From assembly GCF_030684315.1 (NCBI RefSeq), contig NC_081396.1, forward strand, positions 5,704,001-5,768,000: DNA of 64,000 nucleotides. The letters run 5' to 3'. Shown piece after piece: positions 11,573 to 62,587 of the stretch. How positions within the stretch are numbered: position 1 is the first letter of the stretch; the number at the start of each line of letters is the position of its first letter. A program made the position numbers and the translations under genes. The stretch comes from Stegostoma tigrinum (Eukaryota). Under the pieces are notes generated by a model that was given only the letters and a program-made list of their open reading frames with translations, had not been told where the DNA came from and did no database searches.

Positions 11573-12474
11573 TCACTGTTTAATACAAGCAGTAATCATA
11601 GTAAAGGGACACATCAGCATATTCTTCAATTCCTCTCGAAACCTGATCTGTGATATTGCATAAATGAAGACGTTGTTACAGGAGCTTAGTAACTGGAGCA
11701 TGTTAGCCATCTCTTGAAAGATGTACAATGGGTCATTGAAATTCAGACCCGTGAAATATCCCACACCTGTAACCCGCACATAGAGGAACTGCCCGACGTA
11801 GGTCACCCACAGGAAGAGGAAGCTGAGAGAGATGGTGAAAAGCAGCACGATGGACTTATTGCGGTTGGCCATCTCTGAATCTTTGTGACTCAATGCACCT
11901 TGAAGCCTCTTGCGGGCTCTGCTGGCCACGAAGATGTGTCTCACAGTTAGTGCATTAAGAAGCAGTATGAAAAGAAATGGAAGAAATGGGGTTAAGATGT
12001 GGTCCAGCCAGTGGTAGGCCTTCCAGACAGGCAAAGTATAGAAGGAGACTTTGACGTCACAGAACCACGGCACTTTATCCTGAATGTACAAGGGTTGGTA
12101 GATGAAATAAAAGGGAATATTCTTGATGCAGCTCAGGACACAAATAGTTCCTATAACCAACAGTGCAATTTGCTCAGTACAGTATCTGGTCTTCAGGTTC
12201 TGGCAACAGATGGCGACAAAGCGGTCAATGGTGAATGCCACTGTCAGCCAAACAGAGCTATCCCGAGTGCAACGAACCAGCACCGCACTAAGCGTGCAAC
12301 CAAGTGTAGTTGAGAGAGCACTGTACCTTAAGTAGATACGTCCAATCCGGTTGAGGATGACAGAGGTGATAATGACAAGGAAATCAAACACCCCTATGAC
12401 CAATAAGTAGTAAGTGACGCACCGAGAGAGTCCACAACATCCTCGGGAAAGGATTATGATTGCCACCAAATTGG
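11573..12474 (-). CDS. Exon 2 of GPCR copy 1
   Basis: Uninterrupted ORF (track 11573..12469) extended to the AG acceptor; in frame with exon 1. Confidence 0.92.
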
Positions 12475-15400
12475 CTGTGAGAGATCAAGAGAGAGGAATG
12501 TTACTGAAATGACTCTGAACATTAGCTACAATCTAATTTGGTGCATAAACACGGCTGGTTAGACTTTATTTGTTGTGAGTCACGAACAGACCCAATTAAC
12601 AGCTATTCATGCTCCAAGCCAAATCTCGATCACTCTCTTTGTCTATCCCACTGCTCTTCTCTCTCTTTGGGCACTATCCTTTATCCTATCGTTTACTCCC
12701 TATCCGATTCACTCTCCTTACCTTCTGTATATAAACTGACGTTTTCCTCGCCACCATCAGTTCTGAGGAAGGGTCACGGACCTGAAGCGTTAACTCTGTT
12801 TTTTTCATCACAGACGTTGCCAGACCTATTAAGCTTTTCAGCAACTTCTGTCTTTGTTACGACTGTTTAATCATTATCCATAACCACCCGCTGACTAGTG
12901 CACAAGTATCAGTAATTGTTTGAGTTCCAACATTTGAGAAATACGGCTGGCTATTAATACTAAACTGAGGGAAAACATTTGACCATCTCATCAAGTGCCG
13001 TCGACAAAGTGCATTGACCTGCATGTTTGATCTTTTGCTCCACCAGTAACACCCACTTATTTGGGGTCTATTTTTAACTGTGTGTAGTAACGCAGAATTT
13101 TATAACGTTGTTGTTTTAACAAATACAGTAAACATCAATGGTTCATAAGTGTTTACTTGTAGCTAGAATCGCTTGATGTGTCATAGTCATTCTTATTGCG
13201 GAGAATTTTGATAGAGTACTGTGGACTGGGAGACGGGAAGTTGGAATTTGGTGCTTGTAAAATATCGTGCGATTTTTTTTCTCTGCCTAGAAATTTAAAA
13301 TGGATGTCTCTGAGAGCTACATGAAAGTTTGCAAGCACACAGAGAGCACCTGAATTGAAACATTTCTCTCAAAAGGCCGTACAGTTAGCAGGTGAAGCCG
13401 CAGGGTTTTATTTTTAACCCAGACATCAGGCTTTTGAATTTAGCCATCGATTTTGAACCAGGTACTTAGATACAAAAAACCTAATAAATTTAAGCCTCAT
13501 GGTTTTGACAACATAAGATCAATCCTATTGTAAGAAATATTCCTTTTTTCTCATCAGTATAAAAATAAATATGCACATGGACAAAGACTCCAGAGCTAGC
13601 TGCTATTCGCCTGAGCTAACAGCCCTCATCTGTCAAGAGGGAATCATTGGCTATCATGGTCTCCGCTATGGCTTAGTAAAAGCAACATTTCAATGTACCA
13701 ACGGCACAACTCGTTCATATTCCTGACAGAAGAATCAACGGAGAAGGCATTCCTGACAAAAGAATCGATGGAGAAGGGATAGAACATTGCAGAAGAAAAG
13801 CAACCTGGCTGTAATTTCGACATGAACACAACAGGCTAAGCAGCATGCGAGGAGCAGGAAGACTGGGCCAAGACTGAGAGATTTCGAGAGACTAAATTCG
13901 AGTGTTTTATTATGTAAGTGGAGCATGTATTTATGAGAACAGTGTACCTCTAAAATCTTGCTTTCTTCAATAATTGTTAGTAGTTAGAAAGATTTTATTC
14001 GGTTTGTTGACAGTTTAATTAACTTGTTCCCTGTTAAATTTAGATAAGTAAATTGCTATTCTTGGTTTTAGTGTGCATATAAGGATTTATTTTGTTTAAC
14101 CACTAGAAGATGCTGAAAGGTAGATTACAACACTTTTCAAACTCTTTTGCGTATTACAGGGCGAGTTGCTCCTCTTTGTTTATTACAGTTTTAGTCCTCC
14201 GAGGAGTCAACCTCTGCTTTATATCATTATACAGTACAGAAATCAATAAAGTCAACCAAGTTGTGGAAATGTGCATAAATTCATAACATCATTGACCTTT
14301 TGTGTTGTTAAGGGAATAGTAGCATGTACCTTTCAATGTGCTACCTTCGTGAGGCTTAATACTACCGAGTGCCTGATCTCTGATAAGCCTTCATACAATG
14401 GAAGTCTCTCCTTAATTCATGGGGACATTCTTTATACCCTTCTAACTTGTTAACCCCAAGGTTTTCGATCAAATAGCTTCCTGTGTAATTCGATATTAAA
14501 TTTGTTTGTTGAAGTGTGATGAGGTCCCTCGATTCAATTATTTGAGGCACAAAAAATCGCTAATTCCTGAATTCGAAGCTATAAATTAGGCATACATGAT
14601 CGCAAAATGTGGAGCTGGATGAACACAGCAGACCTAGCAGCGTCTTCGAAGCACAAAAGCTGATGTTTCTGGCCTAGACCCTTCATCTAACTTTGTTATC
14701 TCGGATTCTCCAGCATCTGCAGTTCCCATTATCACTGATACAATTAGGCATGCATGTTGACTTCACGACCAACAATTACCTCTCGTGAATGAATTCAAAC
14801 ATGATTATTCAAAATATCATTTAAGTGATTAGTGCAAAGTAGCACAAGACAAATTACAAAGTAGATTGAAATCATTGCAACATATTTCACACTTTCAAAT
14901 CTCTCCAACATTTATTCCTAATTATGCTTCAATATTGTGCGCTGGCAAATGGGAATGCACAACAGAGTAACTATTACGTATTTCCAGAGGTGGCACCGCA
15001 GATTTGAGCAATTAATGGATGAATCCTTATATTGCCATGCATCTAAGACTGTTCTTGCGTGCTATTATTTCTTTTTAGATACGGAAATAAGATTAGTTTC
15101 TCACATTTGAGCTGCATCCACACTGTCGGGCCCTGTAAAATGTATGTTTTGATCATATCACCGATCATTTTCCGAAATTTGAATGAAAACCAAACCTACT
15201 CTCACCCTTCAAAACAATTCTGTTGTCCGAGGAATTATTATGTTGAAATCCATTGTATTCCCGCTATGATATCTTCATTCCTCCTCAGATAAGGAGGCCA
15301 ATAATGTTCGCAACCCTCCTGTTTAGGCCAGAACAAGGCTATATGCAACTTATGCAACAAATCTTTACTCCTATGGAAGGAAGGCCAACGTTAAATTTGT

Positions 15401-18400
15401 CTTTCTAATTACTTCGTGAATCTGGAACCTCACTTTTAGTAATTGATGAATCAATAAAGGGCACAAAGTTACTCTGGGTTGCTCACACTGCTCAACCTCT
15501 CACTTCACAAGAAAAATTGTGTCTTTCTTTCTCATGTTAAAATAAATGATTTTGTACATCTTGTCCCTTCCACAGGCCAGTCGGATCAAATATACCAGTC
15601 TTCACTTCATTTGATTAGCTCGACGTGACTTCAAAACAAATTTGAGAAATTAGGTACGGCAAACGCAATGGCTCCGAACAAGATTCTGGCAATAGCACTG
15701 AAAACTTCTGCTTCAGAATGTTCTGCGCCCTTCGCCAGGTTGTTGAAGTACAGCTACGACATTGGCATCTGGCTAACCACACAGAAATATTATCCAGGTA
15801 CAACGTTTGCAAAAATGGTTGACAAAAGCCTCACAACCGATTACTGCTCTGTCAATCTAGCCTCGAACATGGGTTAAGCAAGTGAGGGTGTCGTCAACAG
15901 TGATATCAAGTAGCAGTTGCCCAACGATAATCTGTTCACTGCTGTGAAGTTTGATATCATGTCAGGGCACTCAGTTGTTAATCTCATTCCAGCTTTTCAG
16001 CAAATGTGATCTTAAGAGCTGAATTCTATGGATGAAATCTATAATCGACCTTCAATAGTACCTGCATGGATTATCAAAACATGAACTGCAAAAATTCACC
16101 AAGACTCCCTTGACAAAATCTTCTAAACTTCTGACAACCTCTATCTGGAACAATAACGATCAAACGTGAATATGCAAACCACCACATGCAAGCTCCCCAC
16201 CAAAACTCTCATCATGCATACTGAGTACTATACGTCCATTCCTTTCATGTTGCTGGGGAAATCTCCTGATCTACCTCCATTAGTGAGTTTATCTAAACCA
16301 CGTGGACCGTATGGGTTGAAGACTGAAGCTCATCACTGCCATATCCAGGGCAACCACGCATACGAAATAAATACATGTCCAGCCAATGATGCCTATTTCC
16401 CGTAAATGGATTTTTAAATGTTTTTCTCTTTTATTCACGGGTAATTAGATGTACACTTGCGATGTCAAATCGTACACCTCTCGACGAACAGTTGGAAGAT
16501 TGGATCGGAATAAGTCAGTGCTTGTATTCGGCCATTGCAGACTTGATATGTGGAAAGGCTTTTGTTTAATTTGAGAGAGATCTGTGTGGCTGTTTTCCAT
16601 TTGCTATGTACAGCCTATTATTTAGCCTGTCGAAGTTCATTTAGAAATCCTGGCATCCTCTCCACAACTGACATTTTTGCAATAGGGCCATAATCATCCA
16701 CCAAACCTGATTCCACGTCATGATCCTTCGACCTGAGGCCCACTGATCTCGTCCCACACTAAAAGTGTCACTTTGTTTTCATTTTAGCTATATCTCCTGT
16801 ATATTCAATAACCTTGGATATTCAGTCCTAGGTGCTGGTCACCCTTAGCAACTTCACCGAATTGACAATCAATCATGTCCACTCACCAGAATGTACACCT
16901 TCAAAACATCAATTCTTTTTCAAATGCTACGTGCAAACAGATATATTGCATTGAATTTTATTTGGCCATTATTCTGCGTTCTGATCCTTTTTGATATTTG
17001 TTTCTCTTTTATTTATCATTCATTCTTCTTTGTTTTCATCTACTGCAGTCAACTCTGAGCTTAGGTTTAAGTCCTCATTCCCCAATCTACTTTGAACCTT
17101 CCCCATCAGCACGAATGATTACTCCTGCGAGGATATTTACCCGTCTCCTGTTAGAGTACGTCAAGAACATTGTGTAAAAGTTACACCTGCGTTGAACCAG
17201 TTACAATTGCCCAGGACACTTGCTGTACTCACCAGCTTTCCAGACATACGTTCAATCGCTGTGTCCCATTTCTATGCTGAACAGCAATTTGGATCGGGAA
17301 TAATACTGACATTGCTACTTTTGAGTTACTTCTTATCAATCTTGATCCTAGTTTCTGCAATACTGATGTCAGGATGCCGTCTTCATTCTGCCTGAGACGT
17401 TTGTAACTGCGTGATCAAACTTCTGGATGTTCACAATCCTCCAGGAGAATGCCCTGCTGTCATGCTGTACCGTAATCCTGGCACCAAGGAGACAACATGC
17501 TAGCAACATATCATATATGACCACAGCAAGAACTGCCTGTTCTCCAAACACTCGAATCCCCCATCATTTATTTCTTCCTCTTCCCCTTCTAACCTTGCTA
17601 TCCAGTTTAACAATACGCAATGACATTGGCTGAACTCATATGAGGATCCAACGCCTTTGCCAGTATCGAGGATGAAAATTTGCTGAACAGGTGGGAATTC
17701 AGGAGCTTGTGCATTACTGCCTTGGACTGAATGAGGATATTTATTTCCCTTTTTGCTTCCATGTTTCTAACCTGTGAGGCATGTCCCTTGCCAAACAGAC
17801 TCTTCAAAGTGGATTGAGACCCACATATGCGCCATTGTTACTCTCAACTCTAAAATCCCAAGTCGAGAGTCTGCAGCTTGTAACACTCCTTAATTGTATT
17901 TATCTAAACCCTAGACGTGACTATATCTTCCTATATATTATATGCCAGATGGTCCAAGTGCTGCTGAGCCGCCTTGCAAAACCATACTAATACTTCACTT
18001 TATTCTACTTTGGTTTAATTACATCAACAATTTTAGGTGGCCTTAACTTCATACACCTTGCAAATAGTGATAAATCTTTCTATTCGCACTGATAAATCAT
18101 CTCAATAATTACCACACTTTACTAAGTCCAATAAACCTGACTTAAATAATTTCTTTCACTTCTGAATCAAATTTCCACATAAATATAATTCATTACTCAA
18201 CTAGCACAGGCCTTCTTCAGGTGTGTCTGAGTGCCCTTAATTACCAAACAAAAACAAAGTTGCTGGAAAAGCTCAGCAGGTCTGGCAACATCTGTGGAGA
18301 AGAAAACAGAGTTAATGTTTCGCGTCCGGTGACCCTTCCTCAGAACTGATGGTGGCTGGGAAAACTTCAGTTCATATGCAGGAAATAGGGACGTGGGAGG

Positions 18401-19270
18401 GGTAGGGAGTAAACGATAGGATAGAGCTCAAAGAGAGAGAAAGACAGTCGGAAAGACAAAGGAGTTGCTAGCGATCCGGTTGGGAGGGTGAATAGTTGTA
18501 ATTGGGGACTGTTCGTGACTAACAACAGGGGTTGTGTAATGGCAGGCTATGTGGTAACAAGGCCTGGTGTGTGTGGTGGGGGGCTGGGACATGGGGTAGT
18601 TTAGGCCCTAAAACTATTGAACTCATTATTTTGTCCAGAGGGCGACAGGGCCCACAAGCAGAAAATGAGGCGTTGTTCCTTCAGCTTCATTGAACCACTG
18701 TAGCAAGCCGGAGACAGAGATATTGGCCAGGGAGCAAGGTGGTGCAATGAAGTGGCAGGCAACAGATAGTTCAGGGTCTTTTTTGTCTTTTCCGCTTAAT
18801 TACCGGGTGTTTTGGAAATTTCTGATTGACAGCGTCTGATGAGTCATTAACTGTTTTAGCTCCCTGCTGCAAGAACCAGCAACAACTAGATCAGCTATTT
18901 TTAGCTGATTGACAGATGTCTTTAATCCTCAGGTCATTCCCTCTTTGTAAAAATCTATTTGACTTATTTGTTGACTGCTAGTTCTTTATCCAAAGAGTAA
19001 CCCATTTCTATATTTACACCTGAAAACACCAGCCCCAGCTTGTTGGATGGACCTAATCAGCTCCCCATCCAGTTTTTACTTCACTTACATGGTTCTTCTA
19101 TCTCTGCGTCCCTCACTATGAAACAAATCAGTTTTATCCTGAAAGATAAGAGGAAATAATCCAGAGGCAAATAAAGATGTATCCAAGAGTTATGACTTAC
19201 CAGGAGCACCAATAACTGCAAGAATGGGATAGCAAATTGCAAAGAAGAGACCATTAGCTGCTCCATGCAT
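11573..19270 (-). CDS. GPR139/GPR142-like class A GPCR, 323 aa, two exons: join(19201..19270, 11573..12474)
   Basis: Exon 1 MHGAANGLFFAICYPILAVIGAP ends at a phase-1 GTAAGT donor; acceptor TCACAG precedes 12474. The ORF has seven hydrophobic segments, TM3 SVWLTVAFTIDRFVAIC, an ECL2 WFC and TM7 NNVFIY. Motifs and the PA|N intron position match GPR139 as recalled. Confidence 0.9.
12615..12862 (+). mobile_element. Penelope-like element 3' terminal fragment (in GPCR intron)
   Basis: CTGAGGA-AGGGTCACGGACCT-GAAGC-GTTAACTCTG terminal motif; same family as 18246-18795. Confidence 0.65.
14599..14741. mobile_element. Penelope-like terminal fragment with ~15-bp TSD
   Basis: AATTAGGCAT(A/G)CATG flanks both sides; internal sequence matches 3747-3972. 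Confidence 0.65.
18246..18795 (-). mobile_element. Penelope-like element 3' end with GIY-YIG C-terminal remnant
   Basis: Minus-strand translation DPELSVACHF...ISVSGLLQ / KLKEQRLIFCL...NNEFNSFRA* followed by the terminal repeat with CTGAGGA...GAAAC; CTTAATTACC is duplicated on both flanks. Confidence 0.75.
19201..19270 (-). CDS. Exon 1 of GPCR copy 1
   Basis: ATG at 19270; 70 nt; GT donor at 19200. Same length as and clearly homologous to exon 1 at 54443-54512. Confidence 0.88.
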
Positions 19271-21780: not shown

Positions 21781-22291
21781 CGTCTACATTTTTACAAAAG
21801 TTTTCATTTTTAACCAAGGCTGCATGATCCTGGAATACTAAATCTATCACTCACCATTCTGGGGCAACAATAATGAAGGGGCAGGGACTGTACTCAATAG
21901 CTCGCAATGTGTTTGTCAATGTTCGAGTTGCACGAGGGTTTTATTGTTAGAATCACATCTCAGGTTATTGTCTCACAGACTGAGCGCTGCAATTCTCTGC
22001 GTCACTGGAGGATTCTATTTAAGCTGAACTGGTTGTTGCATTTTCGACATCATATCGTCTGTGAAACATTGAAACACTTTGGGTCATGTCAAAAAAACAC
22101 GCAATAATTTATTTGTTTTTCATTCAATGAACTGACTACATTTGTTTATTTTAATAGCAGATTATAAATGATTAAAGTTTTGTGTTCGAACAAGAGGCAT
22201 GAGATATCACCGTGAATTCGGCAACCACTTCATATCTGGCCCTGGTCTCACTGTTTCATAATTGTACGGTCATGTTCAGTGGCTCTCTGTC

Positions 22292-22330
22292 AGTTTTTCT
22301 GCGGAGTCAATCCAGTTTAGAGTCTCTGTG
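22292..22330 (-). other. 23-RSS of V pseudogene
   Basis: CACAGAG + 23 nt + AGAAAAACT. Confidence 0.85.
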
Positions 22331-22622
22331 GGGCTCACGACAGTGTCTGTCAGCTCTGTTTTCGATACTTTCAAGTGAATAGTGCGGTTCACATGATCAA
22401 ACTTGGAGGAAAACAGGTGTCCTGGAATTCCCTCTGAGTCCCTGATATATTGGTTTCTCTTCAGCAGATACTCTATGCATCCGCGGGAATGCTGACGGTA
22501 CCAGAACAGATAATCATCACTGCTTAATGCAGCTGCATGATTACAGAATGACAGGCCATCTTCCCCTTCATTCACTGCAGTTGTGGCCGGTGTTTGTGAG
22601 ACAGAATCTGCACGACAAAGTC
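22331..22622 (-). pseudogene. TCR alpha/delta V pseudogene (lacks second Cys; leader exon not found)
   Basis: After an AG acceptor: GLCRADSVSQTPA...FCNH...LFWYRQH...KTELTDTVVSP. Paralog of 61795-62098 with an in-frame 15-nt deletion removing YFCAL. Intron homology stops at 23129, where a Penelope fragment replaces the leader. Confidence 0.88.
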
Positions 22623-23129
22623 CTGTGAGAACCAGGAGTGACACTAAAGTTAAAAAGAAATTTCATTCATTCTTACCGCCTAGAATCAGCCCATTCACCT
22701 TGAACAATAACCAAACAAATAACGCAGGGAAGCTAAACAGGAATCCATTTCATACAACTCAGAGACAGGGACCCGGAAGAGCTTAAACAGATGAAATGAA
22801 ACGTCCTCTCATACAGAGGCTGCACCTTCGAACGAGGTGGTTTCCCATTTCATCTCCCGACTTTAAAGGAAAACTGGAAACAGTCGATGATTTTAAAAGC
22901 CTGGCCCTTGTCATATCATCTCAATGGCTTCACTCCTGTCTCGATATCCAGCCGAACTCTTACATTTTCATTCACTCAGGAACATTCGCTAATTTCTCCA
23001 TGACAGTGCTTCGTGTTGGGACAAGGTTAGATCCAGATGGCTTTCTTCTGGGGACGGTGTGTTCCTGCTTCGGGGTCGCCAGTACTGTTCGAGTAAATAT
23101 GATTCCAGGCAAAGAGCTGAAGCATAGAA

Positions 23130-31106: not shown

Positions 31107-31583
31107 ATGGATGCACTCCTTTTTTTGATCCTATGTCTATGTTTTCCGAGTAAGTACTGATCACAGAAAACAACATTGTACAGAAGTAAAATGACATTGC
31201 TGGCTGCGCTCGTCCGAATCACAGACATGGCAGGGGGTTTTAACATCGTTGTGAGGGTCTCTTCTAATTCCCAATAAACTCTCTCTGTTTCATTTCCAGG
31301 TTATTTCGGTCAGTCAGTGACACAGAACCCGGCAGCGGTGACCAAGAAGGAGTGTCAGTCTGTCAGCATCAACTGTGTTTTCAATAGCCGTAATTCTTAC
31401 CATTATTTTAAGAGTGGAAGTTTCTTCAGAAAAACACGGGAAGCGACGGAATGGGAGCGGATCTCGGGCGATGGAAGATTTGTTGTGTCCGTGAATAAAG
31501 CACAAAAGGCATTTTCGTTGGAAATTCGGGATCTCAGAATTGAAGACACTGCCACATATTACTGCAAGGCTCAGTATTACAGA
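31107..31583 (+). CDS. NAR-TCR variable segment (VNAR-like NTCR V) with leader: join(31107..31149, 31300..31583)
   Basis: Leader MDALLFLILCLCFP with GTAAGT donor and TTTCCAG acceptor. Mature QSVTQNPAAVTKKECQSVSINC...WERISGDGRFVVSVNKAQKAFSLEIRDLRIEDTATYYCKAQYYR. Only 62 aa lie between the canonical Cys (CDR2 deleted), with an extra FR1 Cys and F at the Trp position. Confidence 0.9.
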
Positions 31584-32333: not shown

Positions 32334-32372
32334 GGTTTTTGTCCAGGGGATAGCGAGAGGAGCATGACTGTG
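32334..32372 (+). other. 23-RSS of NAR-TCR J
   Basis: GGTTTTTGT (perfect nonamer) + 23 nt + GACTGTG. Confidence 0.9.
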
Positions 32373-32422
32373 ATAAGATTACTATGTAGATGGATCCGGG
32401 TCGGTGCTGAATGTCATAGCTG
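32373..32422 (+). CDS. NAR-TCR J segment (DYYVDGSGSVLNVIA)
   Basis: Follows a 23-RSS; NAR-type xGxG motif; ends at a phase-1 GTAAGT donor that splices in frame to 36304. Confidence 0.88.
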
Positions 32423-36303: not shown

Positions 36304-36611
36304 ATTCTAATTCCCTGGTGTCCCAGAGTCCGCCTCTGCAAACTTCTGCTGCAGGTGACACAGTTACTTTAAGCTGTGACTATTCAGGATTCGATCAGTA
36401 CACAGTTTACTGGTACAGTCAGTCCCCAGGACACGCTTTGAAATACCTCCTTCAAGGAGACACTTCAGGAAAGCAGAGAAAAGAAAATGCTGCCGGAGGA
36501 CGAATTTCTGCTTCTATTGATCCTAAGACGACAACCAGTCGGTTAATGATCTCTCAAATACAACTGAATGATTCTGCTGTTTATTACTGCGCAAGGAGTC
36601 GGTGCTCAGCA
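36304..36611 (+). CDS. Leaderless supporting TCR delta V segment (STCR-delta V) of NAR-TCR
   Basis: Acceptor CTACAG, then (D)SNSLVSQSPPLQTSAAGDTVTLSCDYSGFDQYTVYWYSQSPG...DSAVYYCARSRCSA. Both Cys and Trp are intact; no leader exon found; phase matches the upstream J donor. Confidence 0.9.
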
Positions 36612-36650
36612 CACAGAGATACAGAGCACGGAGAAAGCTCAACAAAAACT
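36612..36650 (+). other. 23-RSS of supporting V-delta
   Basis: CACAGAG + 23 nt + ACAAAAACT. Confidence 0.92.
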
Positions 36651-38954: not shown

Positions 38955-39625
38955 TGACAGCAGGCTGTGAAGAAAGCTAATAGCATGCTGGCCTTCATAA
39001 CAAGAGGAATTGAGTATAGGAGCAAAGAGGTCCTTCTGCAGCTGTACAGGGCCCTGGTGAGACCGCACCTGGAGTATTGTGGGCAGTTTTGGTCTCCAAA
39101 TTTGAGGAAGGACGTTCTTGCTATTGAGGGAGTGCAGCGTAGGTTCACGAGGTCAATTCCCGGAATCGCGGGACTATCATATGTTGAAAGATTGGAGCGA
39201 CTGGGCTTGTATACACTTGAGTTTAGAAGGATGAGAGGGGATCTGATTGAGGTGTATAAGATTATTAAGGAATTGGACACTCTGGAGGCAGGAAGCATGT
39301 TTCCGCTGATGGGTGAGTCCAGAGCCAAAGGACACAGTTTAAAATTAAGGAATAGGCCATTTAGAACAGAGTTGAGGAAAAACTTCTTCACCCAGAGTGG
39401 TGGATATATGGAATGCTCTGCCCCAGAAGGCAGTAGAGGCCAGCTCTCTGGATACTTTTACTAAAGAGATAGATAGAGCTCTTAAAGATAGAGGAATCAA
39501 GGGTTATGGGGATACGGCAGGTCCAGGATACTGATTGTGGATGATCAGCCACGATCATAATGACTGGTGGTGCTGGTTCAAAAGGTCGAATGGCCTACTC
39601 CAGCACCTATTGTCTATTGTCGATT
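38955..39625 (+). mobile_element. CR1 LINE 3' fragment (second subfamily)
   Basis: ORF 38967-39464 KKANSMLAFI...RPHLEYC...RGDLIEVYK; CTATTGT repeat tail. Confidence 0.92.
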
Positions 39626-42457
39626 GAATTTTAGATGAGCTCTGACTTAGTTAGTGAGTTGACATTCCTCATTATTATTTTGCTAATTCCTGTCGGCTTA
39701 ATAAGCTTTTAAGCTTGTTTTTCATTATACTTTCCCAGATACTATGTAACATTTCACAAGCCCTATTTCCTTTTCTACCAGTGTTCGTATGTTGATGGGC
39801 CGACAGTGTTGACGCATCCTATCTATCAATAGTATAATAACTGACAATCGCTTCAACTGTCCATCAATTTATTACCAGGAGAATGTACGTTGCTTCAACT
39901 AGTACAGCGATAGCTATGTTATTGTTCACACTTAACTTCGCTGCATCATTTCTATCGGTTTTTGCTGATGTTACATCACACCGGATTATTGTCTCCAATA
40001 AGCTGTGTCATGCCTCTGCTTCCATTAAGATCCATTCCTTTTTTTTTCTAGACTGTGTCAATGGCATTGTACAATCAAAAGCTGTTTACTACATTCGACT
40101 CTGTTTGAGTCCATATTGCACCTTCAGGTTTCTTAATTATTCCTGCAACGTTATATTCTTCTTTTTAAGTTGTGTTATCTCTGCACCTATGAACACTGCC
40201 GTTGGCTTTAGCTCATTTGTTACCGCACTACAGTATGAACCTTGCTGCATTGAATCGACCGTGTCATTCTTGTGGATGAAGTAGGCATTTTAATTTTCAG
40301 CCATCTTCCAGTCACTCACTAAACTGATGTTTGTCTCGTTATATTAAATATTGACATTAGTCAACTGTGTCTGCACCAGAAACTCTGAACACAAACTTGA
40401 GCACTTGAGCTCCCTTCGTGCACTTGTAATTGATCTGACAAAATGAAGGATTTTTCAGACTCAACATGACCAAAATTTTCATTTGATGCTCTCTACCACA
40501 TTAACCTCCCGTGTTTGCTAACTGTGCATTCTAATTTATTGAACCGTTTAATCAGCGTTCACGTATTCGGCACTAAAACGTAGATGAATGAATATGTATG
40601 GTGAAGTAAATTGACACTCGAAATAAAAATCAAACTAAGAAATACCAGAAAAAAAACAGAAACAGAAAGGATAGTTTTGCAACACCACTCAGCTCAGTAT
40701 CTGCTGTCAGGGAGTTCACTTGATCCAGTCACAAAGTCATGTTTTGTCGGGTTGGATGAACCAAAGAAATTAAAACGAGCCATTCCAAAATTGAAATTCA
40801 ATCATTGACATTGTTGGAGGACGTGCAACAGTAAGATAATCTGTCTGTTCAGCGAAAGTTAAGCAAGGTGCATGTTATAACGTAATTGCCCATCACGAGA
40901 CAATCATTCAAACTAAATAGAGACACATTTAATTATGTCACAGAGCAAAAATCCACCAAGATATCAACGCTAGTAGTTACTGAACGAGGATGCACTCGTC
41001 AGACATTACTTTCTTCGTTGTCATTTGCTGTTCATAAAATGCCGCAAATACTCCCTCTGATAAGTCACTGATGCTCAAGAAAAGTTTTGTCATGTTTGTG
41101 CATTTCCACAAATTTATTCCCCTTTCATGATTCGGTGGAATTCTTCCAACATGAAACATTTTGATTTTAAGGGACTTCAACCCGCCTCCAGTACATTTAT
41201 TATGTTATTGGATATTATTTGTGCTGTGGCAAATAATCAAACATTACTTACAATTTCAGTATTATGAAAGGCAAGCTGTTCTTGAATTCTGCATATTGTG
41301 TATTTATGGGAAAGTTGCCTACTGACGCTGAACTACAAATCGTGATGAATGACTTTGCATCAATATTATACTATAATACTGTCACAAATTAGGCTCCATT
41401 CCAATTCGGTAGTATGCAAACAGTGTTTCAATCCATTGTCAGATTAATTGTTTCGCATTGTGCTAAAATGCCTATTTTGCGCATGTATCATTGCATTATC
41501 TGAATATTATTTTCCCTGTGGTAGTACCTTATGTTTTGTAATACAAGCATACATTCAGTGATTAATGACTCTACAGCCTATTTCATGGTACAATATAATA
41601 GAGTTCCCAACGGACTGCACCAATATTAATGCGGTCTTTAGAATTAATTAGAGTTTAGTCTAAAAGACACCCATGAAGATTCAAGACTTTTAAGCTGTTG
41701 TTAATTTGCTTCCTTGCTGCGAAGTTCCACGCTTTTGGATATTTGCATTGTTTCATAAAAACCAGAAAAGGCGCACTTCATCTTAAGCCACGTCACTGCA
41801 GAGGTGAAACGCCAGAACAATTTAATTAACCATTTTATACTGAATGTATATGACATATTATTAAAAGGTTTGATCAAAAGAACGTCTGAAAGAAGGTGTC
41901 AGTCGTGGAGCAGCTGAAGTGATACTTCCAGCGATTAGGGCTTTACTCATTAAATCATTAATTGACATAGATAGAAGTACCAATGTGAGCTACAGGAGGG
42001 AGAGAGAATGACAGTTAACATGAGATTTATAACTGTTGTTGGGTGTTACAGGAATGGATATGGCGAAACTCTGGGACTTCTGAAAGATGTAGATGTAGAA
42101 GGATGAGATTGTAAATGGTAAGACAACATTAGCGAGGAGCCAATGTTGGTCACAGTTTGTGGGTCAAAGGATGAACAGTGCATGGCAGGAATTAGATCAT
42201 GGGCACCACATTGTTCCGCTTATCCTGAATTAAACAAGTAGCCGCTGAAATTTATTCAGTGACCAGAGAGCAACATTTATTCCCAGTGCTTATCATATGA
42301 ACAGATGTGTTATGCTACACTGGATGTCCAACACTTGTCAATAGTTTAAAAATTGTCGGAGACTGGAAGTGACAAGGTGATGGCTGGAGATTGCAGGAGG
42401 CAACCCCTGCTGCCTAGAAAGAGTTCAGTCATAGCTATCTCTTTTGGGAAGTCACAT

Positions 42458-42978
42458 CAACTTGTTGGCGATTTTAATCCAACTCGAGGGTGGTGCAGTC
42501 TCTCCAGCTGCATTATCTACTAATATTTTGGTGATTGCAGTGAGTGATTTCCATGTTACAACCACCAGAGTTATCCTCAATGGAATCAGTAGTATCAAAT
42601 TCTAGGCAAGTGTCTGACCTACACTTCTGCGTGCAGATTCAGCATCTTGATGGCCTATGTCATAGTCGATTGCTCCATCTGATGACAGTTGCCTTCGCCA
42701 TTGACTTTTTTGTGGTTATCTGCAACCAGAAACCGAAGACCAGACATGACACGGAGGAAACAGCATCATTGATCAATGGACTGATCTGTGTCCTGAGCTT
42801 TATCAAAAACGTCCCTTTTTACTTTGCATTCAAGCCTTTGTTCATTTTGTATGGAATACCATGGATTTGGAGCATCAAAGCCAACATCTGCATCTGGCCA
42901 GCTTGGCAGGCTTATGATTATTTCTTTCAGATCTTTACCCTTTCTCACCTGTTCATCCTCATTTGTTGCAACCCTTAA
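42458..42978 (+). pseudogene. GPR139-like GPCR pseudogene (exon 2 remnant, TM1-TM5)
   Basis: TCACAT (mutated acceptor), NLLAIL, frameshifts and stop, then MTVAFAIDFFVVICNQKPKTRHDTEETASLINGLICVLSFIKNVPFYF..PW..WQAYD, colinear with both intact GPCRs; truncated in TM5. A possible decayed exon 1 lies near 41160-41230. Confidence 0.85.
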
Positions 42979-44960: not shown

Positions 44961-45504
44961 AGGCACTAATTATGTTTCTCTGTAATAACTCAGTTTGTCT
45001 CTCTCACCCTGCAGTCTTATTTCAGGACCTGCAGTTGAACAAAAGATGAGGGAAATTGAGTTTAAAGGAGGCGCTCGCACCTGATTTTTGTTAAATTGTA
45101 ATCTTTCAAATCAAACTCAGTCTGATTACCTGTTTATATATATTCAGAAAGAGCGCGACAGAAAAGGGGAATGAAGGTGAAACTCATATCAAGAAAGAGA
45201 GATACCATCAGAAAGAGATAAGTATGGGACTGAGTGATACACAGAGGAACGAGCAAAAGGGTGCGATAAAAGTGAAATGGTGGTCACTGAAACAGAGAAA
45301 TTCCAGGAGAGAAAGAAGTACCAACCCAGAGACACACACAGACAACCGAGCTACATGTTGTGCCCTAAGTGAATAGACAGAGACCGACGCAATCACATGA
45401 ATGATGCAATGATTGAATTAGCATTTCTGTGGCAGTTTAAAGCCAACATCGCCGGTGAGCATATGAGTTACGCTTGTGAATTTATATGTTTGCTCTGATT
45501 TGTC

Positions 45505-46370: not shown

Positions 46371-47259
46371 AACTTTATGATAACATAATAGCTTGTAACA
46401 AATGGTCATCTTCTCAACTTGGGCCTGGCCAAATGGTTAGAATTTTTCATCAGCTCCCGAAAGAATTTAATACACAAGATACAATAAGCAAACTGCAAAG
46501 TATCTGTGATGAGAAAAGGCTTTGCAGATTCGTGTAGAGAACTTTCAACAGATGCAGTCTGATCTTAATGTTCAGCTCTGTGCAAAATTCAAAAACTACA
46601 TTAATCTTGAGGCTGATGGCAACTGAACAGTTCATTTTCACTAGTGCCATTTCACTCAAATTAAAGCTTTAAGTTTCCAAGTAGGACAGACTTTAAGATG
46701 GATTTTTTTTAAATCCGTCTTTATTTTCTTCATGACTAGTTAAAGCTCTGTTATGTTTGTCCTGCAGATCCATTTAATTCATGAAAAAAGTATTCCCTGT
46801 TTTACATCGTATGATGTATCGCATAAACATTACCAAGTAACCCGTAATACCCCCAGCCCCATGGAAGACACAGAAGTCTACTCGTCCACCCTGCACGATT
46901 TGTCAGCACAAAGCCCCAAGAATCGTGCCTCCCCAAGGTGCAGAACAATGTCCCAGCCATCGCTGCATAATGATCATGAACTTGTCTCCATTATTTCCAA
47001 TGAAAAGAATGTAGAAAAAGAAATTTTAAAATAAATGAAGTTTCAGCAGAAATCGATGTTGCCAACATTTCCACTCCCCCCAGCACAAGCTCCACCTCCC
47101 ACTCCCACTCCCCCGCCAAGTTCCATTGAGGCCAATTTACTGTGCCGACTATAACATCCCACTAATGTCACTGGATACACGGATAGCATGACCTGTTCTA
47201 GTCCATCAGTATTCATATCAAACCCATCATTATCAGCTCAAAGTCAGTCATTATGGGTA

Positions 47260-47387
47260 TAACAAAATGGTTCCGAGCTTTCAACATTTCAGTGGCAATC
47301 TCAATCTCGTACAAAGTACTTTTCAAACGTCCGTGAATATTTTGAAGATGACAGTCAGCACCGTGTATTACTGCTGTCTGAGACCGC
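47260..47387 (+). pseudogene. TCR V-segment 3' relic (FR3 only recognisable)
   Basis: + strand frame QHFSGNLNLVQSTFQTSVNILKMTVSTVYYCCLRP is directly followed by an RSS; 5' part has stops. Confidence 0.75.
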
Positions 47388-47426
47388 CACAATGAATTAG
47401 GATGCCTCAAACCTCATACAAAAACT
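47388..47426 (+). other. 23-RSS of V relic
   Basis: CACAATG + 23 nt + ACAAAAACT. Confidence 0.88.
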
Positions 47427-54442: not shown

Positions 54443-56089
54443 ATGCATGGCCCAGCAAATGGCCCGTTCTATGCCATTTATTATCCAATTCTTGCTGTTA
54501 TTGGTGTCCCTGGTAAGTAACAGGTTCCAAATGTTTGTTTTTAAGTGCAACAAAATCGTTCTGTTAAATATCAGGATTTGGTGATATTCCCAGTTGAAGG
54601 AAACTCAGCCCAAGTTCGAATATGCACATGCAAAACGTTAAGTTATACTGAATGACACCCATTTGCAAGGCGCAAGGTTATATCTAACCTGTGAAGGAGA
54701 AAACAAAGTTAACATTTCGGGTCCAGTGACCCTTCCTCAGAACATTCTGAGGAAGGGCCACCGAACCCCAAACGTGAACTCTGTTTTTACCTTCACAGAA
54801 GCTGCCAGATTTGCTGAGCTTTTCCAGCAACTTTGATTTTGTTTCTGATTTACAGCGTTCACAGTTCGTTCAGATTTTATTATATCTAACTGTTACACTG
54901 AGAAATTAGACAACAGTTGTTGGTTAGATCCTGGATTTTTGAACTGCAATGCGGACCATTGACTGAGCAGATAAACTGCCCAAGTGTAAATTCCATTGTT
55001 ATGGTGGAAACTGAAATCTAATGTTATTGGTGTTATTTGGCATAATCGGCTAACATTGCGTCCGACATTTTTCGGCACAGATTTCATGATAATTTCAACA
55101 GAAAGTACTGAAGATCTGTCGTTGTTTTAAACATTAAAACTATATCTAACAAACACTCCAGTCAGTAGAGTCATGTTTTGAAATTTCTCGCAGCCAACTT
55201 GCTGGCCATCGTTGTACTGTTACGAGGACGGTGTGGACTCTCTCGGTGTACTACCTATTATTTGATGGGGATAGCAGTGAGCGATTTTCTGGTTATCATC
55301 ACTGGGTGCATCCTAAATCGGATTGGTGGCATTTATTTCCGGCACAGCGCCCTGTCCACAACAAACGCCTGTGCACTCAGCACTGTGATGATCTATGCCA
55401 GCCGAGATGGTTCAGTCTGGCTGACAGTGGCCTTCACCATCGACCGCTTTGTCGCCATTTGCTGCCAGAGTCTCAAGGCCAGGTACTGCACCGAGAAAAC
55501 GGCCTCATTGTTCATCGGAGTGGTTTGCGTCCTGAGCTGCGTCAAGAACCTGCCTTCCTACTTCGTCTACCAGCCCTTGTACGTTGTGGATGGTGTGGCC
55601 TGGTTCTGTAAATTCAGAGACGCATACTATAACTCACCTGCATGGAAATCCTATGACTGGCTGAATCACATCTTGACGCCTGTTCTCCCATTGCTTCTTG
55701 TTCTGCTATTCAATGCTTTGACTGTCAGGTGCATCTTAGTGGCCAACAGTGCCCGAAAGAAGCTCCGGAACACAGGGAGACGCGGGGACCCAGAGATGGC
55801 CAATCGCAAGAGGTCTATTGTACTGCTCTTCACCATCTCGCTGAGCTTCCTCCTTCTATGGGTCCCTTATGTCGGGCGCTTCCTCTATGTGCGGGTTACT
55901 GGTGAGACCTACTTCAGTGGCTTGGATTTCACTGACTCACAGTTCATTCTCCAGGAGACCACCAACATGCTGCAGATACTCAGTTCGTGCAACAATGTCT
56001 TCATTTATGCAATATCCCAGAACAAATTCCGAGACGAGCTTAAGAAGGTTCTGTTGTCTCCCTTCACAACTCTCACCGGCTGCAAATAA
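54443..56089 (+). CDS. GPR139/GPR142-like class A GPCR, 321 aa, two exons: join(54443..54512, 55194..56089)
   Basis: Exon 1 MHGPANGPFYAIYYPILAVIGVP with GTAAGT donor; acceptor TCGCAG. 7TM ORF with TIDRFVAIC, WFC, LWVPY and NNVFIY; roughly two-thirds identical to copy 1 by eye. Confidence 0.92.
54688..54880. mobile_element. Penelope-like inverted terminal fragment in GPCR copy 2 intron
   Basis: CCCTTCCTCAGAA / TTCTGAGGAAGGG head-to-head, with complementary flanks. Confidence 0.65.
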
Positions 56090-56653
56090 TTTTGTCATGT
56101 TGTTTTGCTTTCACCAGGATGGATCAGTGTGAAATGCGTTTTCTTTCTCTCTCACTTAATTTTTTAAAATACTTGTGTGTTTATGCTTTTCCATTTGAGA
56201 AATGAACAGTTAGAATGTGAGCCTTGAAATGCGTTGTTGCTAAAACTAACAGAATGTAAAACCAGAAGCTGTGCATTTCAGGGTGAGAAGCTAAACCACA
56301 ATCTGTGTTCGTGATCACTATTTTAGATTTCTAATGGTCTGGAACATTTCATTTGATATTCAGCTCTTTCTGTCCTTCCCACTCAGTAGCCATTCTTCTG
56401 TCAATCCTTTGTTCCATCGCCCTCATTAAAGTCTCAGGACTATTGCATCTATTTCCCTGAATCTGTCACTTTTAACTTCACTTTCATACTGTACTGACGA
56501 ACAGCTCATTATGACATTGATCTTGGCTGTTTTCATTTTTTTGCCTGGATTGTACGACCTGTGCGATCATTCAGTAATGCTCAGGTTTAGGTTATATCTT
56601 TCACATTAACAGCAGATCCAGATAAAGTCTCACCACCATTCCCCCCCTCGGCT

Positions 56654-56656
<3 letters not shown>

Positions 56657-56712
<56 letters not shown>
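56657..56712. repeat. (CA)n microsatellite, ~28 units
   Basis: Direct read. Confidence 0.98.
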
Positions 56713-56715
<3 letters not shown>

Positions 56716-58079
56716 GAATTACGTGCTCCACCTTCCCTCTACCACAAAATACATCAATGTTATTGATTAAGGTGATTAATATTAATCGAGTAAGGATATT
56801 TTGCATGTTCTTCAGACAAGTAATTACATTTTCCAGTCCGAACAATGGTTTCTCTCTTGTCCCTGCGTGAAGATTCCTAATGGAGAAAGTGCACCACCTA
56901 GTGGGGGATTCGGATAAACGTGGTGAGTTAATTTTCAGTCACTGAAACCTTGATTGACTGGTCTTCATTCTTCAAGGAAAACTATATTCTGATGAGTAGA
57001 AATTATTCCTCCTCTACTGCAAATTTTGTAGGCATCAACATTGTTATTTATTTATTTTGAATATCACTCAATAATTAAAACATATGTTTAATCTATTTTT
57101 GAAAAATTGTGTAATCTTTTCTTGGGATTTGAATATGACCAACAAGTCTGATGCTTATGATTCAAACTCAAGTAAAGTTCGGAATCACGGAGGTTCCAAT
57201 ACTCGTAGATGTTGAAATTGGTACTGTAAGATTACCCTCATGACATACTTTTAATTTGGCATGGACAGTCAACTGGGACAGACAGTTATGACAAAGAGTC
57301 ATCGGGCTTGATAAGTTGATTCTCATTAGTCCTCACAGCTGCTGCCAGACCTGCAGAGTTTCGTAAGCAATTTGTCTTTTGTTTCAAATCTATAATATCC
57401 GTAGGTCCTGGTTTTATTGTCACGGTATTCAAGTAATCAATGAAAACACAACTGATGATATTCTACAGTAAACTGAAAGATTCTGAAGTAAAAGTGTACA
57501 TTAACAAAATCCATTAGTTTTTCATTGCACAAATCTACGATTTGACTAAGTGCATGATTTTCATCTGGCACACAGTAAAGGTTTTTTCCCACAACTGAGT
57601 GACACGAATAAAAATGGTTACAGAACTCAAGACGGATCCCAACCATTTTGTCGATCAGGACTTTTCTAACTCAAGTCAGATATAACAGAGGCCAACGAAG
57701 AAGATCAATAAATGCATTTGCTCATCAGTAAAATATTTCTATTCATATTCAATTGCGATGAAAGTATTGTCTATCTTTAATCTGAGCATATTACTCTGAG
57801 CTCCCGAAATTATCTTAACTTAGCTGTAAAAGAATTTTCTCTGCTGCAATCAATATTTGGGGGGAATTGATTGCCGCTAAATAGCACATCAGTCGTGAGG
57901 TTGTGAACTGGTATGCAGTGAGTTGTCAAAATTTGGGATATTCAGCCAAGTTACTGGTAAAGCAGGAAAGAAAGAAAGGCTTTGAGATGGTGCCAGGATA
58001 ATTCTGTATGTATTGGAGGATGGAGACACCCGGTCTGTGGAATGAGTAGAGGAGAGGAAATCATTCATTCATAGTTATG

Positions 58080-61320: not shown

Positions 61321-62514
61321 GTCTGCATGATCCTGGACCTGTGTATCTCTCACTTGTCATTCTGGAACTGTAACGTGAGGGAGAACCCACAACGTGCTTG
61401 ACAAAATTCAGTTCACTCCAGTGTTTCATTTCTAGCATCCTGCTCCACGTCGTTGCCTCTCAAATCCAGTTCCGTCTATTACTGGAGGATTTTGCTTGAT
61501 CAACACCAATTGCTGAATTTTCGATCGGACCTCATTGCTGTAATTTGGAACATCATGAAAGACACAAACTCAATCATTTGTTTAGTAGTCACGAAACTGA
61601 CGGCACGAGATTATTTCAAAGATAGATTTCTAATGATGAAAGCTTTGTGTCCGAAGTAGAAGTGTGAAACATCACAGTGAATTCGGGAACTACTTCAGAT
61701 CCATTCCTATCTCACTGTTTGCCTGACGGAGTATCGTGATCAGTGGCGCCCTCAGAGTTTTTGTACAGGGTCAGCTCAGTTCTCAGTGTCTGTGGGGTTC
61801 AGTGCGCAGAAATACACTGCGGAGTCTGATAGTTCTGTTTTCAACACTCTCAGCTGGATAGTGCGGTTCACATGATCAAAATCCGAGGAAAGCCGGTCAT
61901 TCAGTAAGCTCGCTCGATTCTCACTATATCGGTTTTTCTGCAGTAGAAAATGTATGGAGCCGCTGGAATGTTGACGGTACCAGAACAGGTTAGGGTTACT
62001 GCTTGTTGTAGTGTAATTACAGAACAACAGGACATCATCACCCTCATTCACTGAAATTGCAGCCGCTGTTTGTGAGACAGAATCTCCACGACAAAGTCCT
62101 GAAAGAATGGAGAGTTTCAGAAAATTGAATAACAGACTTCAACATTCTGTCGCTCAGAATCAGCCCATTAACCGTCATCACTAACATGAGAAATGAATCA
62201 GGGAAGTTGAACTACAATCCGTTATGAGGAGGTCATTTCCTGAAACTTAAAGGGAAAGCTGAAAACAGTTGGTGGATTTTAAACTCTCCCCTCGGTTGAA
62301 TCACCGTTTTGTCCTCCGTCCTGACTGAATGTCCAGCCTAACTCTTCCACTGTCATTCACTCAGGTACGTTTGCTGATTTCTCTCAAACTCTGCTCACTG
62401 TTCGGACATGTTTATATCCATTTGGTTTTCATTTGGGGAGAATGTATTGCTGCTTCCATGTTGCCGATACTGCTTGAGCAAATGGAATTCATGGCAAAGA
62501 GCTGAAGCATAGAA
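61321..62514. repeat. Segmental duplication block Y (paralog 21820-23129)
   Basis: Colinear similarity covering the V 3' flank, V exon and intron, ending at GCAAAGAGCTGAAGCATAGAA in both copies. Confidence 0.88.
61756..61794 (-). other. 23-RSS of TCR V
   Basis: CACAGAC + 23 nt + ACAAAAACT. Confidence 0.9.
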
Positions 62515-62587
62515 AGAGACAACTTTTCAACCTACCCATGAGAAGAGCTGCTACTGGGAGAAGCAAACGCAGAGCTCCAGGCGACAT
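61795..62587 (-). CDS. Apparently functional TCR alpha/delta V gene segment: join(62536..62587, 61795..62098)
   Basis: Leader MSPGALRLLLPVAALLM with phase-1 GTAGGT donor and TTTCAG acceptor. GLCRGDSVSQTAAAISVNEGDDVLLFCNYTTTSSNPNLFWYRQH...KTELSDSAVYFCALNP with Cys/Trp/Cys intact. Confidence 0.92.

What the first reader, a model, noticed from the sequence alone, without database searches (positions are those of the whole stretch)
11573..62587. An orphan GPR139-like GPCR family is interleaved with rearranging TCR V segments
Seen: the order is GPCR1(-), V relic, V pseudogene, NAR-TCR cassette, GPCR pseudogene(+), V relic, V relic, GPCR2(+), functional V. Two GPCRs are intact with identical 70-nt first exons. 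Established: other antigen-receptor loci carry passenger families (olfactory receptors at mammalian TRA/TRD, trypsinogens at TRB), and GPR139/142 are aromatic amino acid/peptide sensors, single-copy in mammals. Inference: this is a paralog-rich receptor family evolving birth-and-death inside the shark TCR alpha/delta V array. It may be opened by the same chromatin programme in thymocytes and act as a lymphocyte sensing repertoire. I do not know of a functional description of this linkage.
Basis: partly seen in the sequence, partly recalled or inferred. Interest (0 to 1): 0.85.

Follow-up and report, generated by a model that had tools for sequence, protein, structure and literature searches.

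The report
Orphan receptor genes among shark TCR segments
Two intact orphan G-protein-coupled receptor genes really do sit between T-cell-receptor gene segments in a zebra-shark chromosome, but they belong to a huge, undescribed shark-and-ray receptor family found on many chromosomes, and nothing yet links them to immune cells.

Summary
Two intact two-exon class-A GPCR genes lie among a functional TCR alpha/delta-type V with a 23-RSS, a complete NAR-TCR cassette and V relics. A truncated GPCR pseudogene and an orphan exon-1 relic lie there too. The two first exons are both 70 nt long but only 56/70 identical. One reported V relic could not be found.

GPCR1 exon 2 is 100% identical to a RefSeq Stegostoma tigrinum protein on a 16.4-Mb scaffold.

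The family is an elasmobranch-specific expansion: at least 1,772 protein clusters at E<=1e-20, on many chromosomes. Human GPR139 is the nearest solved receptor, but distantly (67 bits). The window's genes belong to one subfamily that sits mostly on a single chromosome per species. They are under purifying selection (dN/dS 0.13).

Best reading: functional passenger receptors that duplicated alongside V segments in a duplication-prone region, like olfactory receptor genes in mammalian TRA.

The lymphocyte-sensor idea has no support here.

First readers of this scan noted the same interleaving in about ten other windows of this scaffold. Those notes are unchecked.

The parts
11573..12474 (-). GPCR1 exon 2 (TM1 end to stop; 299 codons plus stop)
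   Evidence: ORF; Pfam 7tm_1 at 8e-16; acceptor seen; 100% identical to RefSeq S. tigrinum P0046.
19201..19270 (-). GPCR1 exon 1 (70 nt, MHGAANGLFFAICYPILAVIGAP, donor GTAAGT)
   Evidence: Matches the family-wide N-terminal consensus MHxPxxGxxxAIYYPxLAAxGVPAN.
15100..15168 (-). Alternative first coding exon used by the RefSeq model of GPCR1, inside the intron; not conserved in the family
   Evidence: tblastn of the P0046 N-terminus.
10006..10075 (-). Orphan GPCR exon-1 relic (70 nt; donor GT changed to AT; no exon 2 found in the window)
   Evidence: tblastn; sequence.
22279..22644 (-). TCR alpha/delta-type V pseudogene (second Cys / YYC region lost). The homology block 22093-23129 matches the functional V including its intron and leader.
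31108..31583 (+). NAR-TCR V: leader 31108-31150, intron, V exon 31300-31583, followed by the heptamer CACAGTG
   Evidence: Sequence; best PDB hits are shark VNAR domains at 1.5e-18.
32334..32422 (+). NAR-TCR J: RSS GGTTTTTGT-23-GACTGTG (32334-32372), J coding 32373-32422, then a GTAAGT splice donor
36304..36650 (+). Leaderless supporting V (splice acceptor at 36303, coding to 36611, RSS CACAGAG-23-ACAAAAACT at 36612-36650)
   Evidence: Sequence; Pfam V-set at 3e-16; best PDB hits are antibody VH domains.
42435..42978 (+). GPCR pseudogene (TM1-TM5 only, in-frame stops, DRF changed to DFF)
   Evidence: tblastn; sequence; no Pfam hit.
45031..45159 (+). Weak V relic (FR1/CDR1-like, with a stop)
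   Evidence: tblastn E=0.016.
47204..47426 (+). V relic (FR3 ...VYYCCLRP) with an intact RSS CACAATG-23-ACAAAAACT at 47388-47426
54443..54512 (+). GPCR2 exon 1 (70 nt, MHGPANGPFYAIYYPILAVIGVP, donor GTAAGT)
55194..56089 (+). GPCR2 exon 2 (297 codons plus stop)
   Evidence: Sequence; Pfam 7tm_1 at 7e-23; 90% identical to the Rhincodon ortholog P0001.
61756..62587 (-). Functional TCR alpha/delta-type V: leader 62587-62536, V exon 62098-61795, RSS CACAGAC-23-ACAAAAACT at 61794-61756
   Evidence: Sequence; best PDB hits are TCR alpha chains at 5e-15.

Best explanation
GPCR1 and GPCR2 are functional members of a very large, elasmobranch-specific expansion of an orphan class-A GPCR family. Its nearest characterised relative is GPR139.

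One subfamily of this expansion has multiplied by local block duplication with birth and death. This happened on the chromosome that, in the zebra shark, carries the multi-megabase TCR alpha/delta V array. V segments and receptor genes duplicated in the same duplication-prone DNA, so they became interleaved. This resembles olfactory-receptor genes in mammalian TRA/TRD and trypsinogen genes in TRB.

Shown here:
- gene structure and intactness
- purifying selection
- the size of the family and its spread over many contigs
- the subfamily's concentration on one contig per species

Inferred:
- The linkage is a by-product of shared duplication dynamics, so the receptors are passengers.
- They act as ordinary G-protein-coupled sensors of small or peptide ligands, bound in a transmembrane pocket with a very short N-terminus.
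- The tissue is not specifically lymphoid. A sensory or neural tissue is the likeliest guess.
For: Intact genes:
- Canonical GT-AG splice sites and conserved class-A hallmarks: N in TM1 (PAN), D in TM2, the TM3 and ECL2 cysteines, DRF, the TM6 LW.P motif, the TM7 N...Y motif and the helix-8 F.
- dN/dS between the two window genes is 0.13, with dS about 1.5.
- Each gene has a 1:1 ortholog in Rhincodon (P0049 and P0001; G2 to P0001 is 90% identical at protein level), both on the same 11.73-Mb scaffold.

Family size and spread:
- 548 hits to GPCR2.
- 1,772 hits at E<=1e-20 to a divergent catshark member.
- 136 clusters at 50% identity with E<=1e-30.
- Copies lie on 18 or more contigs in Heterodontus and on 3 contigs in Stegostoma. 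Some gene models are fused to hemopexin or sodium-channel neighbours, which places those copies at other loci.
- Elasmobranch sequences form one clade against the salamander and coelacanth relatives.

Subfamily concentration: the clade holding the window's genes sits mostly on one contig per species. Counts are Rhincodon 10/11, Stegostoma 5/6, Cetorhinus 6/6, C. punctatum 8/12 and Heterodontus 8/12.

Old duplications inside the window involve both gene kinds at similar divergence: G1/G2 72% nt, V/pseudo-V 71% including the intron, and a 4-kb inverted pair at 66-74%.

No paper in the searched library links GPR139-like genes to sharks or to TCR loci.
Against: - No expression data of any kind could be obtained, so a lymphoid role is untested rather than excluded.
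- Interleaving at roughly one receptor gene per V, reported by other first readers over about 8 Mb of this scaffold (unchecked), is denser than the mammalian OR/TRA example. It could reflect more than chance co-duplication.
- Within this window, V and GPCR copies are not arranged as one simple repeated cassette, because their orientations differ. Co-amplification as a unit is therefore not shown here.
- Whether the orthologous clusters in other species also lie within TCR alpha/delta loci could not be tested.
Confidence: 0.62

Rival explanations
1. Lymphocyte sensing repertoire. The receptors are opened by the same chromatin programme as the V array in thymocytes and act in T cells. V-to-J deletion would then give clones different receptor gene content.
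For: - Physical interleaving with functional V segments and a NAR-TCR cassette.
- A subfamily concentrated on the same scaffold.
- Long-term purifying selection.
Against: - There is no expression evidence at all.
- The family is genome-wide, with large arrays on chromosomes that are not this one. Family function therefore does not depend on the TCR locus.
- Established knowledge: deletional V(D)J joining removes the DNA between V and J, so many T cells would lose these genes. That argues against a stable T-cell role.
- The OR and trypsinogen precedents have no known lymphocyte function.
Confidence: 0.07
2. Undescribed elasmobranch chemosensory receptor family. The whole expansion, including this subfamily, would be expressed one or few per cell in olfactory, taste or other sensory epithelia. 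The TCR linkage would be incidental. This refines the passenger reading rather than excluding it.
For: - Very large, lineage-specific, tandemly arrayed, compact genes showing birth and death.
- Variability is concentrated in ECL2 and ECL3, with a conserved TM core and intracellular face.
- Sharks have very small OR, TAAR and V1R repertoires according to PMC6368271 and PMC10116579 (found).
- Established knowledge: GPR139 is activated by aromatic amino acids.
Against: - There is no expression evidence.
- The catshark sensory atlas found no GPCR among the 50 most specific olfactory-library genes (PMC11979771).
- Paralogs are fairly conserved (55-70% identity across orders), less divergent than typical odorant receptors.
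Confidence: 0.25
3. Decaying or mis-assembled sequence: the ORFs are relics, or the juxtaposition with V segments is an assembly artefact.
For: - A pseudogene and an exon relic are present.
- GPCR2 has no RefSeq protein among the hits.
- The RefSeq model of GPCR1 uses a different first exon.
Against: - dN/dS is 0.13 and all hallmark residues are kept.
- Orthologs are 90% or more identical in whale shark.
- Contigs of an independent run of the same organism tile most of 54000-57000 with no differences, in short pieces (182-424 nt).
- Both genes and the V segments lie within single uninterrupted sequence with no N.
Confidence: 0.04

Closest known systems
Human GPR139 (PDB 7VUG/9M42) and its paralog GPR142
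   Same: - GPR139 is the top solved structure for the family profile: E 1.1e-17 and 67 bits over 305 positions, against 1e-10 for the next hit.
- Shared motifs in the alignment: TM1 YY..L...G.PAN, TIDR(Y/F), TM6 LW.P, TM7 N.F.Y without proline, and helix-8 K.FR.
- Both have a short N-terminus.
- A single intron in TM1 is also recalled for GPR139. This is from memory and was not tested.
   Different: - The relation is distant: a single sequence scores GPR139 no better than CCR5 or GPR21.
- Salamander, coelacanth, teleost and amphioxus proteins score higher than human GPR139 does.
- The shark family keeps an invariant ECL2 cysteine (WFC) in a stretch that is a gap in the alignment to GPR139.
- It has hundreds to thousands of copies rather than a single copy.
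- Orthology was not tested with a tree containing bona fide GPR139 and GPR142.
Olfactory receptor genes inside the mammalian TRA/TRD V region, and trypsinogen genes inside TRB
   Same: A multigene family with no known immune role lies between functional V segments of a rearranging locus, and both gene kinds evolve by birth and death. The comparison rests on established knowledge. The interleaving itself is shown here.
   Different: - The receptor family is different.
- Density is much higher: about one receptor gene per V in this window.
- According to unchecked scan notes, the pattern extends over about 8 Mb.
- The family also has large arrays elsewhere.
NAR-TCR (doubly rearranging TCR delta) cassettes of sharks
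   Same: The window holds the published layout: a NAR-type V with leader and RSS, a J with RSS and splice donor, then a leaderless supporting V with a splice acceptor and 23-RSS.
   Different: - No D segment was identified.
- A LINE reverse-transcriptase fragment sits in the intron between J and the supporting V.
- The supporting V resembles antibody VH most closely in the PDB.

Membership tests
Class A (rhodopsin-like) GPCR, Pfam PF00001 | Significant match to the 7tm_1 profile over seven helices | tested here: met
   58.7 and 81.9 bits against a cut-off of 30.5; profile positions 15-260 and 2-260 of 260, from exon 2 alone.
Class A (rhodopsin-like) GPCR, Pfam PF00001 | Hallmark residues: TM1 N, TM2 D, TM3-ECL2 cysteine pair, D/E-R-Y/F, TM6 W-x-P, TM7 N-P-x-x-Y | tested here: met
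   These are invariant or nearly invariant in 30 family members: N1, D30, C59/C138, D83-R84-F85, W222 (followed by x-P) and N267...Y271. The TM7 proline is replaced (NVFIY), as it is in GPR139 (NFFLY).
GPR139/GPR142 subfamily | GPR139 or GPR142 as the nearest characterised relative | tested here: met
   Profile against PDB: GPR139 at E 1.1e-17, next hit (CCR5) at 1e-10. A single sequence does not separate them.
GPR139/GPR142 subfamily | Orthology: groups inside the GPR139/142 clade in a tree | not tested
   No bona fide GPR139 or GPR142 sequence was available as a tool reference. Score gaps argue for a separate family: 67 bits for human GPR139 against 113-211 bits for bony-vertebrate relatives and over 300 bits within sharks.
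GPR139/GPR142 subfamily | Same intron position (within TM1, before the PAN motif) | not testable with these tools
   The shark genes split after G-x-P in phase 1. No GPR139 gene structure was available here.
TCR alpha/delta V gene segment | Split leader, V-set domain with both cysteines, 23-bp-spacer RSS, best similarity to TCR alpha/delta V | tested here: met
   V at 61756-62587: leader and intron, the C...W...YFC pattern, and CACAGAC-23-ACAAAAACT. PDB top hits are TCR alpha chains, with delta also listed.
NAR-TCR cassette | NAR-type V with leader, own J with RSS and splice donor, leaderless supporting V with acceptor and RSS | tested here: met
   The D segment was not searched for conclusively.
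Passenger gene family in an antigen-receptor locus | Non-Ig genes located between functional rearranging segments | tested here: met
   Both GPCR genes lie between RSS-bearing V segments.
Passenger gene family in an antigen-receptor locus | Expression and function independent of lymphocytes | not testable with these tools
   No RNA run holds the gene, and the laid runs are DNA-like.

The most novel reading that the evidence does not exclude
The TCR-scaffold subfamily is transcribed in developing T cells because it shares the V array's open chromatin. Deletional or inversional V-to-J joining then leaves each T-cell clone with a different set of receptor genes, giving a clonally variable sensing repertoire. 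Alternatively, at a higher probability of about 0.25, the whole family is the missing large chemoreceptor repertoire of sharks and rays.
Probability: 0.07. Interest if true: 0.9.

Novelty: new member of a known kind. Interest (0 to 1): 0.6.

Why it matters
Two things would matter.

First, an expansion of well over a thousand orphan class-A receptor proteins across sharks and rays exists in public annotations under the automatic name 'probable GPR139'. No paper in the searched library discusses it. Sharks have famously few conventional odorant receptors, so this family is a concrete candidate for unexplained ligand sensing and can now be tested.

Second, one subfamily is interleaved gene-for-gene with TCR alpha/delta and NAR-TCR V segments. 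This is a second, much denser vertebrate example of a receptor family riding inside an antigen-receptor V array. It could show how V arrays expand. It also allows a test of whether V(D)J deletion or V-array chromatin affects embedded genes.

Tried and rejected
The genomic neighbourhood of orthologs in other sharks could not be fetched.
- I tried to use contig length as a fingerprint for TCR-bearing scaffolds by searching the functional V. Only 6 proteins came back, none on chromosome-scale contigs.
- I looked for RefSeq models that fuse a V domain to a GPCR, as a proxy for adjacency in other species. There were none. The fusions found were with hemopexin, a sodium channel and a TRIM coiled coil.
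- The sequencing-run search gave no RNA holder. Run X1 is DNA matching the window. Runs X5 and X6 are small, extremely deep, DNA-like runs of another organism that also cover the intron and flanks. Run X24 holds only a repeat. Expression is therefore unresolved.
- Literature searches (GPR139 with shark or elasmobranch; 'coupled receptor 139'; NAR-TCR locus; shark TCR V chromosome) found nothing on this family or this linkage.
- The newt and axolotl TCR papers do not mention it. The catshark paper has no supplements held as text.
- The protein-atlas search only returned the same automatically named clusters.
- I rejected a simple V+GPCR tandem cassette within this window, because the orientations of the homologous pieces disagree.
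- I rejected the pseudogene reading for GPCR1 and GPCR2.
- Method note: the two exons of each gene were joined inside a script. The joined models were translated and compared with the window itself.
Full report
**What is in the window**

The 64-kb window has no N. Two intact rhodopsin-class receptor genes are present.

- GPCR1 is on the minus strand. It has a 70-nt first exon at 19270..19201 ending CCTG|GTAAGT, a 6.7-kb intron, and a second exon at 12474..11573.
- GPCR2 is on the plus strand. It has a 70-nt first exon at 54443..54512, a 681-nt intron, and a second exon at 55194..56089.
Both second exons match Pfam 7tm_1 well above the cut-off.
- The two first exons share length and phase but only 56 of 70 bases, and the proteins are 67% identical. 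'Identical first exons' is therefore true of length only.
- A third copy at 42435-42978 is a truncated pseudogene with stops and a broken DRF motif.
- A fourth first-exon copy at 10075-10006 (minus strand) has lost its splice donor (GT to AT) and has no second exon in the window.

Method note: the exons were joined inside a script. The joined models were translated and compared with the window itself. Every database search used exon 2 alone, by reference, and the joined models were not searched.

**The antigen-receptor elements are real**

- The V at 61756-62587 (minus strand) has a split leader, both cysteines, and CACAGAC-23-ACAAAAACT. It is most similar to TCR alpha chains in the PDB, with delta chains also listed.
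- The NAR-TCR cassette is complete in outline:
  - a NAR-type V with leader at 31108-31583, whose best matches are shark VNAR domains;
  - a J at 32373-32422, preceded by GGTTTTTGT-23-GACTGTG and followed by GTAAGT;
  - a leaderless supporting V at 36304-36611 with a splice acceptor and a 23-RSS.
- NAR-TCR is used only with TCR delta (established knowledge). The window therefore lies in the alpha/delta V region.
- A V pseudogene lies at 22279-22644. Relics lie at 45031-45159 and 47204-47426, the latter with an intact RSS.

**Which genome**

GPCR1 exon 2 is 100% identical over 299 residues to a RefSeq protein of Stegostoma tigrinum. That protein is named 'probable G-protein coupled receptor 139' and lies on a 16,414,262-bp contig.

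The RefSeq model uses a different first exon at 15168-15100, which lacks the N-terminus conserved in the family.

GPCR2 has no RefSeq protein among the hits. Its best matches are a EukProt fragment (93%) and a whale-shark ortholog (90%).

**What the family is**

- A single-sequence search of the PDB does not single out GPR139: E 1e-6, behind GPR21 and CCR5.
- A profile of 30 family members does: GPR139 at E 1.1e-17 and 67 bits, next hit at 1e-10. Shared motifs lie in TM1, the DR(Y/F) motif, TM6, TM7 and helix 8.
- The relation is still distant. In the 1.84-billion-protein library, 136 clusters score E<=1e-30. The nearest non-elasmobranch proteins are from salamanders (211 bits), coelacanth (183), teleosts (160 and 113) and amphioxus (137). 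All of these score above human GPR139.
- In a tree, all sampled elasmobranch sequences form one clade apart from these. This is a lineage-specific expansion of a GPR139-related family, not GPR139 itself.

**How big it is and where it lies**

GPCR2 finds 548 proteins. A divergent catshark member finds 1,772 proteins at E<=1e-20, nearly all from sharks and rays.

Contig lengths serve here as contig fingerprints. Copies lie on at least 18 contigs in Heterodontus, one of which holds about 20 copies. In Stegostoma they lie on three contigs (16.41, 108.38 and 13.97 Mb). The family is therefore genome-wide.

A tree of both hit sets splits into two supported subfamilies.

| Species | Copies of the window's subfamily on the main contig | Main contig |
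|---|---|---|
| Rhincodon | 10 of 11 | 11.73 Mb |
| Stegostoma | 5 of 6 | 16.41 Mb (the window's own scaffold) |
| Cetorhinus | 6 of 6 | 65.16 Mb |
| C. punctatum | 8 of 12 | 76.23 Mb |
| Heterodontus | 8 of 12 | 59.49 Mb |

- The other subfamily sits on other chromosomes.
- Both window genes have 1:1 whale-shark orthologs on the same scaffold.
Paralogs are genome-wide, but a locus-concentrated clade exists.
- These counts come from truncated top-120 lists and are biased towards relatives of the queries.

**Functional state**

Thirty diverse members keep the class-A hallmarks invariant, as well as an unusual conserved first intracellular loop, RGRCGLSRC. dN/dS between GPCR1 and GPCR2 is 0.13, with saturated dS. 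Variation is highest in ECL2, ECL3, ICL3 and the tail, and lowest in the TM core. These are working receptors.

**How the interleaving arose**

Self-comparison of the window shows old duplications of similar divergence for both gene kinds:

- G1/G2 exon 2: 72% nt.
- V and pseudo-V, including intron and leader: 71%.
- A 4-kb inverted pair, 4860-8836 against 29193-24634: 66-74%.
- A 1.1-kb direct pair.

Orientations do not fit one simple repeated V+GPCR unit here. Shared block duplication in a duplication-prone region is inferred, not demonstrated.

About ten unchecked first-reader notes report the same interleaving from 4.4 Mb before to 3.8 Mb beyond this window on the same piece. One note reports an array on another piece. 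Independent partial support: four other RefSeq family genes lie on the 16.41-Mb contig but outside this window.

**Expression and cross-species linkage were not testable**

- No RNA run holds GPCR2. The four runs laid are DNA-like or hold only an intronic repeat.
- V segments are hardly represented as proteins in the database.
- No RefSeq model fuses a V to a GPCR.
- The literature library holds nothing on this family in cartilaginous fish or on its linkage to TCR loci.

**Verdict**

The proposed lymphocyte role rests on position alone.

The most likely account is a functional passenger subfamily that duplicated alongside V segments. A chemosensory role for the family is a reasonable but untested guess. 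The finding is a new instance of a known kind of arrangement, and it exposes an undescribed large receptor family.

Noticed in passing
window 10006-10075 (-): Orphan copy of the 70-nt GPCR first exon (MHVAANVHSFAILYPILAVVGVS) with its splice donor changed from GT to AT. It lies 1.5 kb beyond the stop of GPCR1, and no matching second exon is in the window.
   Followed up: partly
window 15100-15168 (-): The RefSeq model of GPCR1 (P0046) starts in a non-conserved exon inside the intron and lacks the family's conserved N-terminus. The whale-shark models P0001 and P0049 also have odd N-termini. Automatic models of this family often miss exon 1.
   Followed up: partly
window 36304-36650 (+): The leaderless supporting V of the NAR-TCR cassette ends in YYCAR. 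Its best PDB matches are antibody VH domains rather than TCR V domains.
   Followed up: partly
window 4860-8836 and 24634-29193: A roughly 4-kb inverted duplicate pair (66-74% identity) brackets the unit made of the exon-1 relic, GPCR1 and the V pseudogene. Whether it is a transposable element or a segmental duplication was not checked.
   Followed up: no
window 54000-57000 (runs X5, X6): Two very small runs (about 44 million letters, 2020) of another organism hold this stretch, intron and flanks included. They give thousands of short, very deep contigs at 90-99% identity. This looks like targeted or clone sequencing of the orthologous region in a related shark, but the origin is unknown.
   Followed up: partly
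window 54606-54908: A short interspersed repeat inside the GPCR2 intron, with enormous depth in run X1. Copies also lie at 12760-12858, 18246-18346 and 26605-26704.
   Followed up: no
window 33532-34470, 37957-39464, 51187-52302: LINE reverse-transcriptase fragments (Pfam RVT_1). One lies in the intron between the NAR-TCR J and the supporting V.
   Followed up: partly
family alignment A1, first intracellular loop (GPCR2 exon-2 residues 10-18): A nearly invariant motif RGRCGLSRC with two cysteines in the first intracellular loop across sharks and rays. It is aligned to different residues in GPR139. This is unusual for class-A receptors and is unexplained.
   Followed up: no
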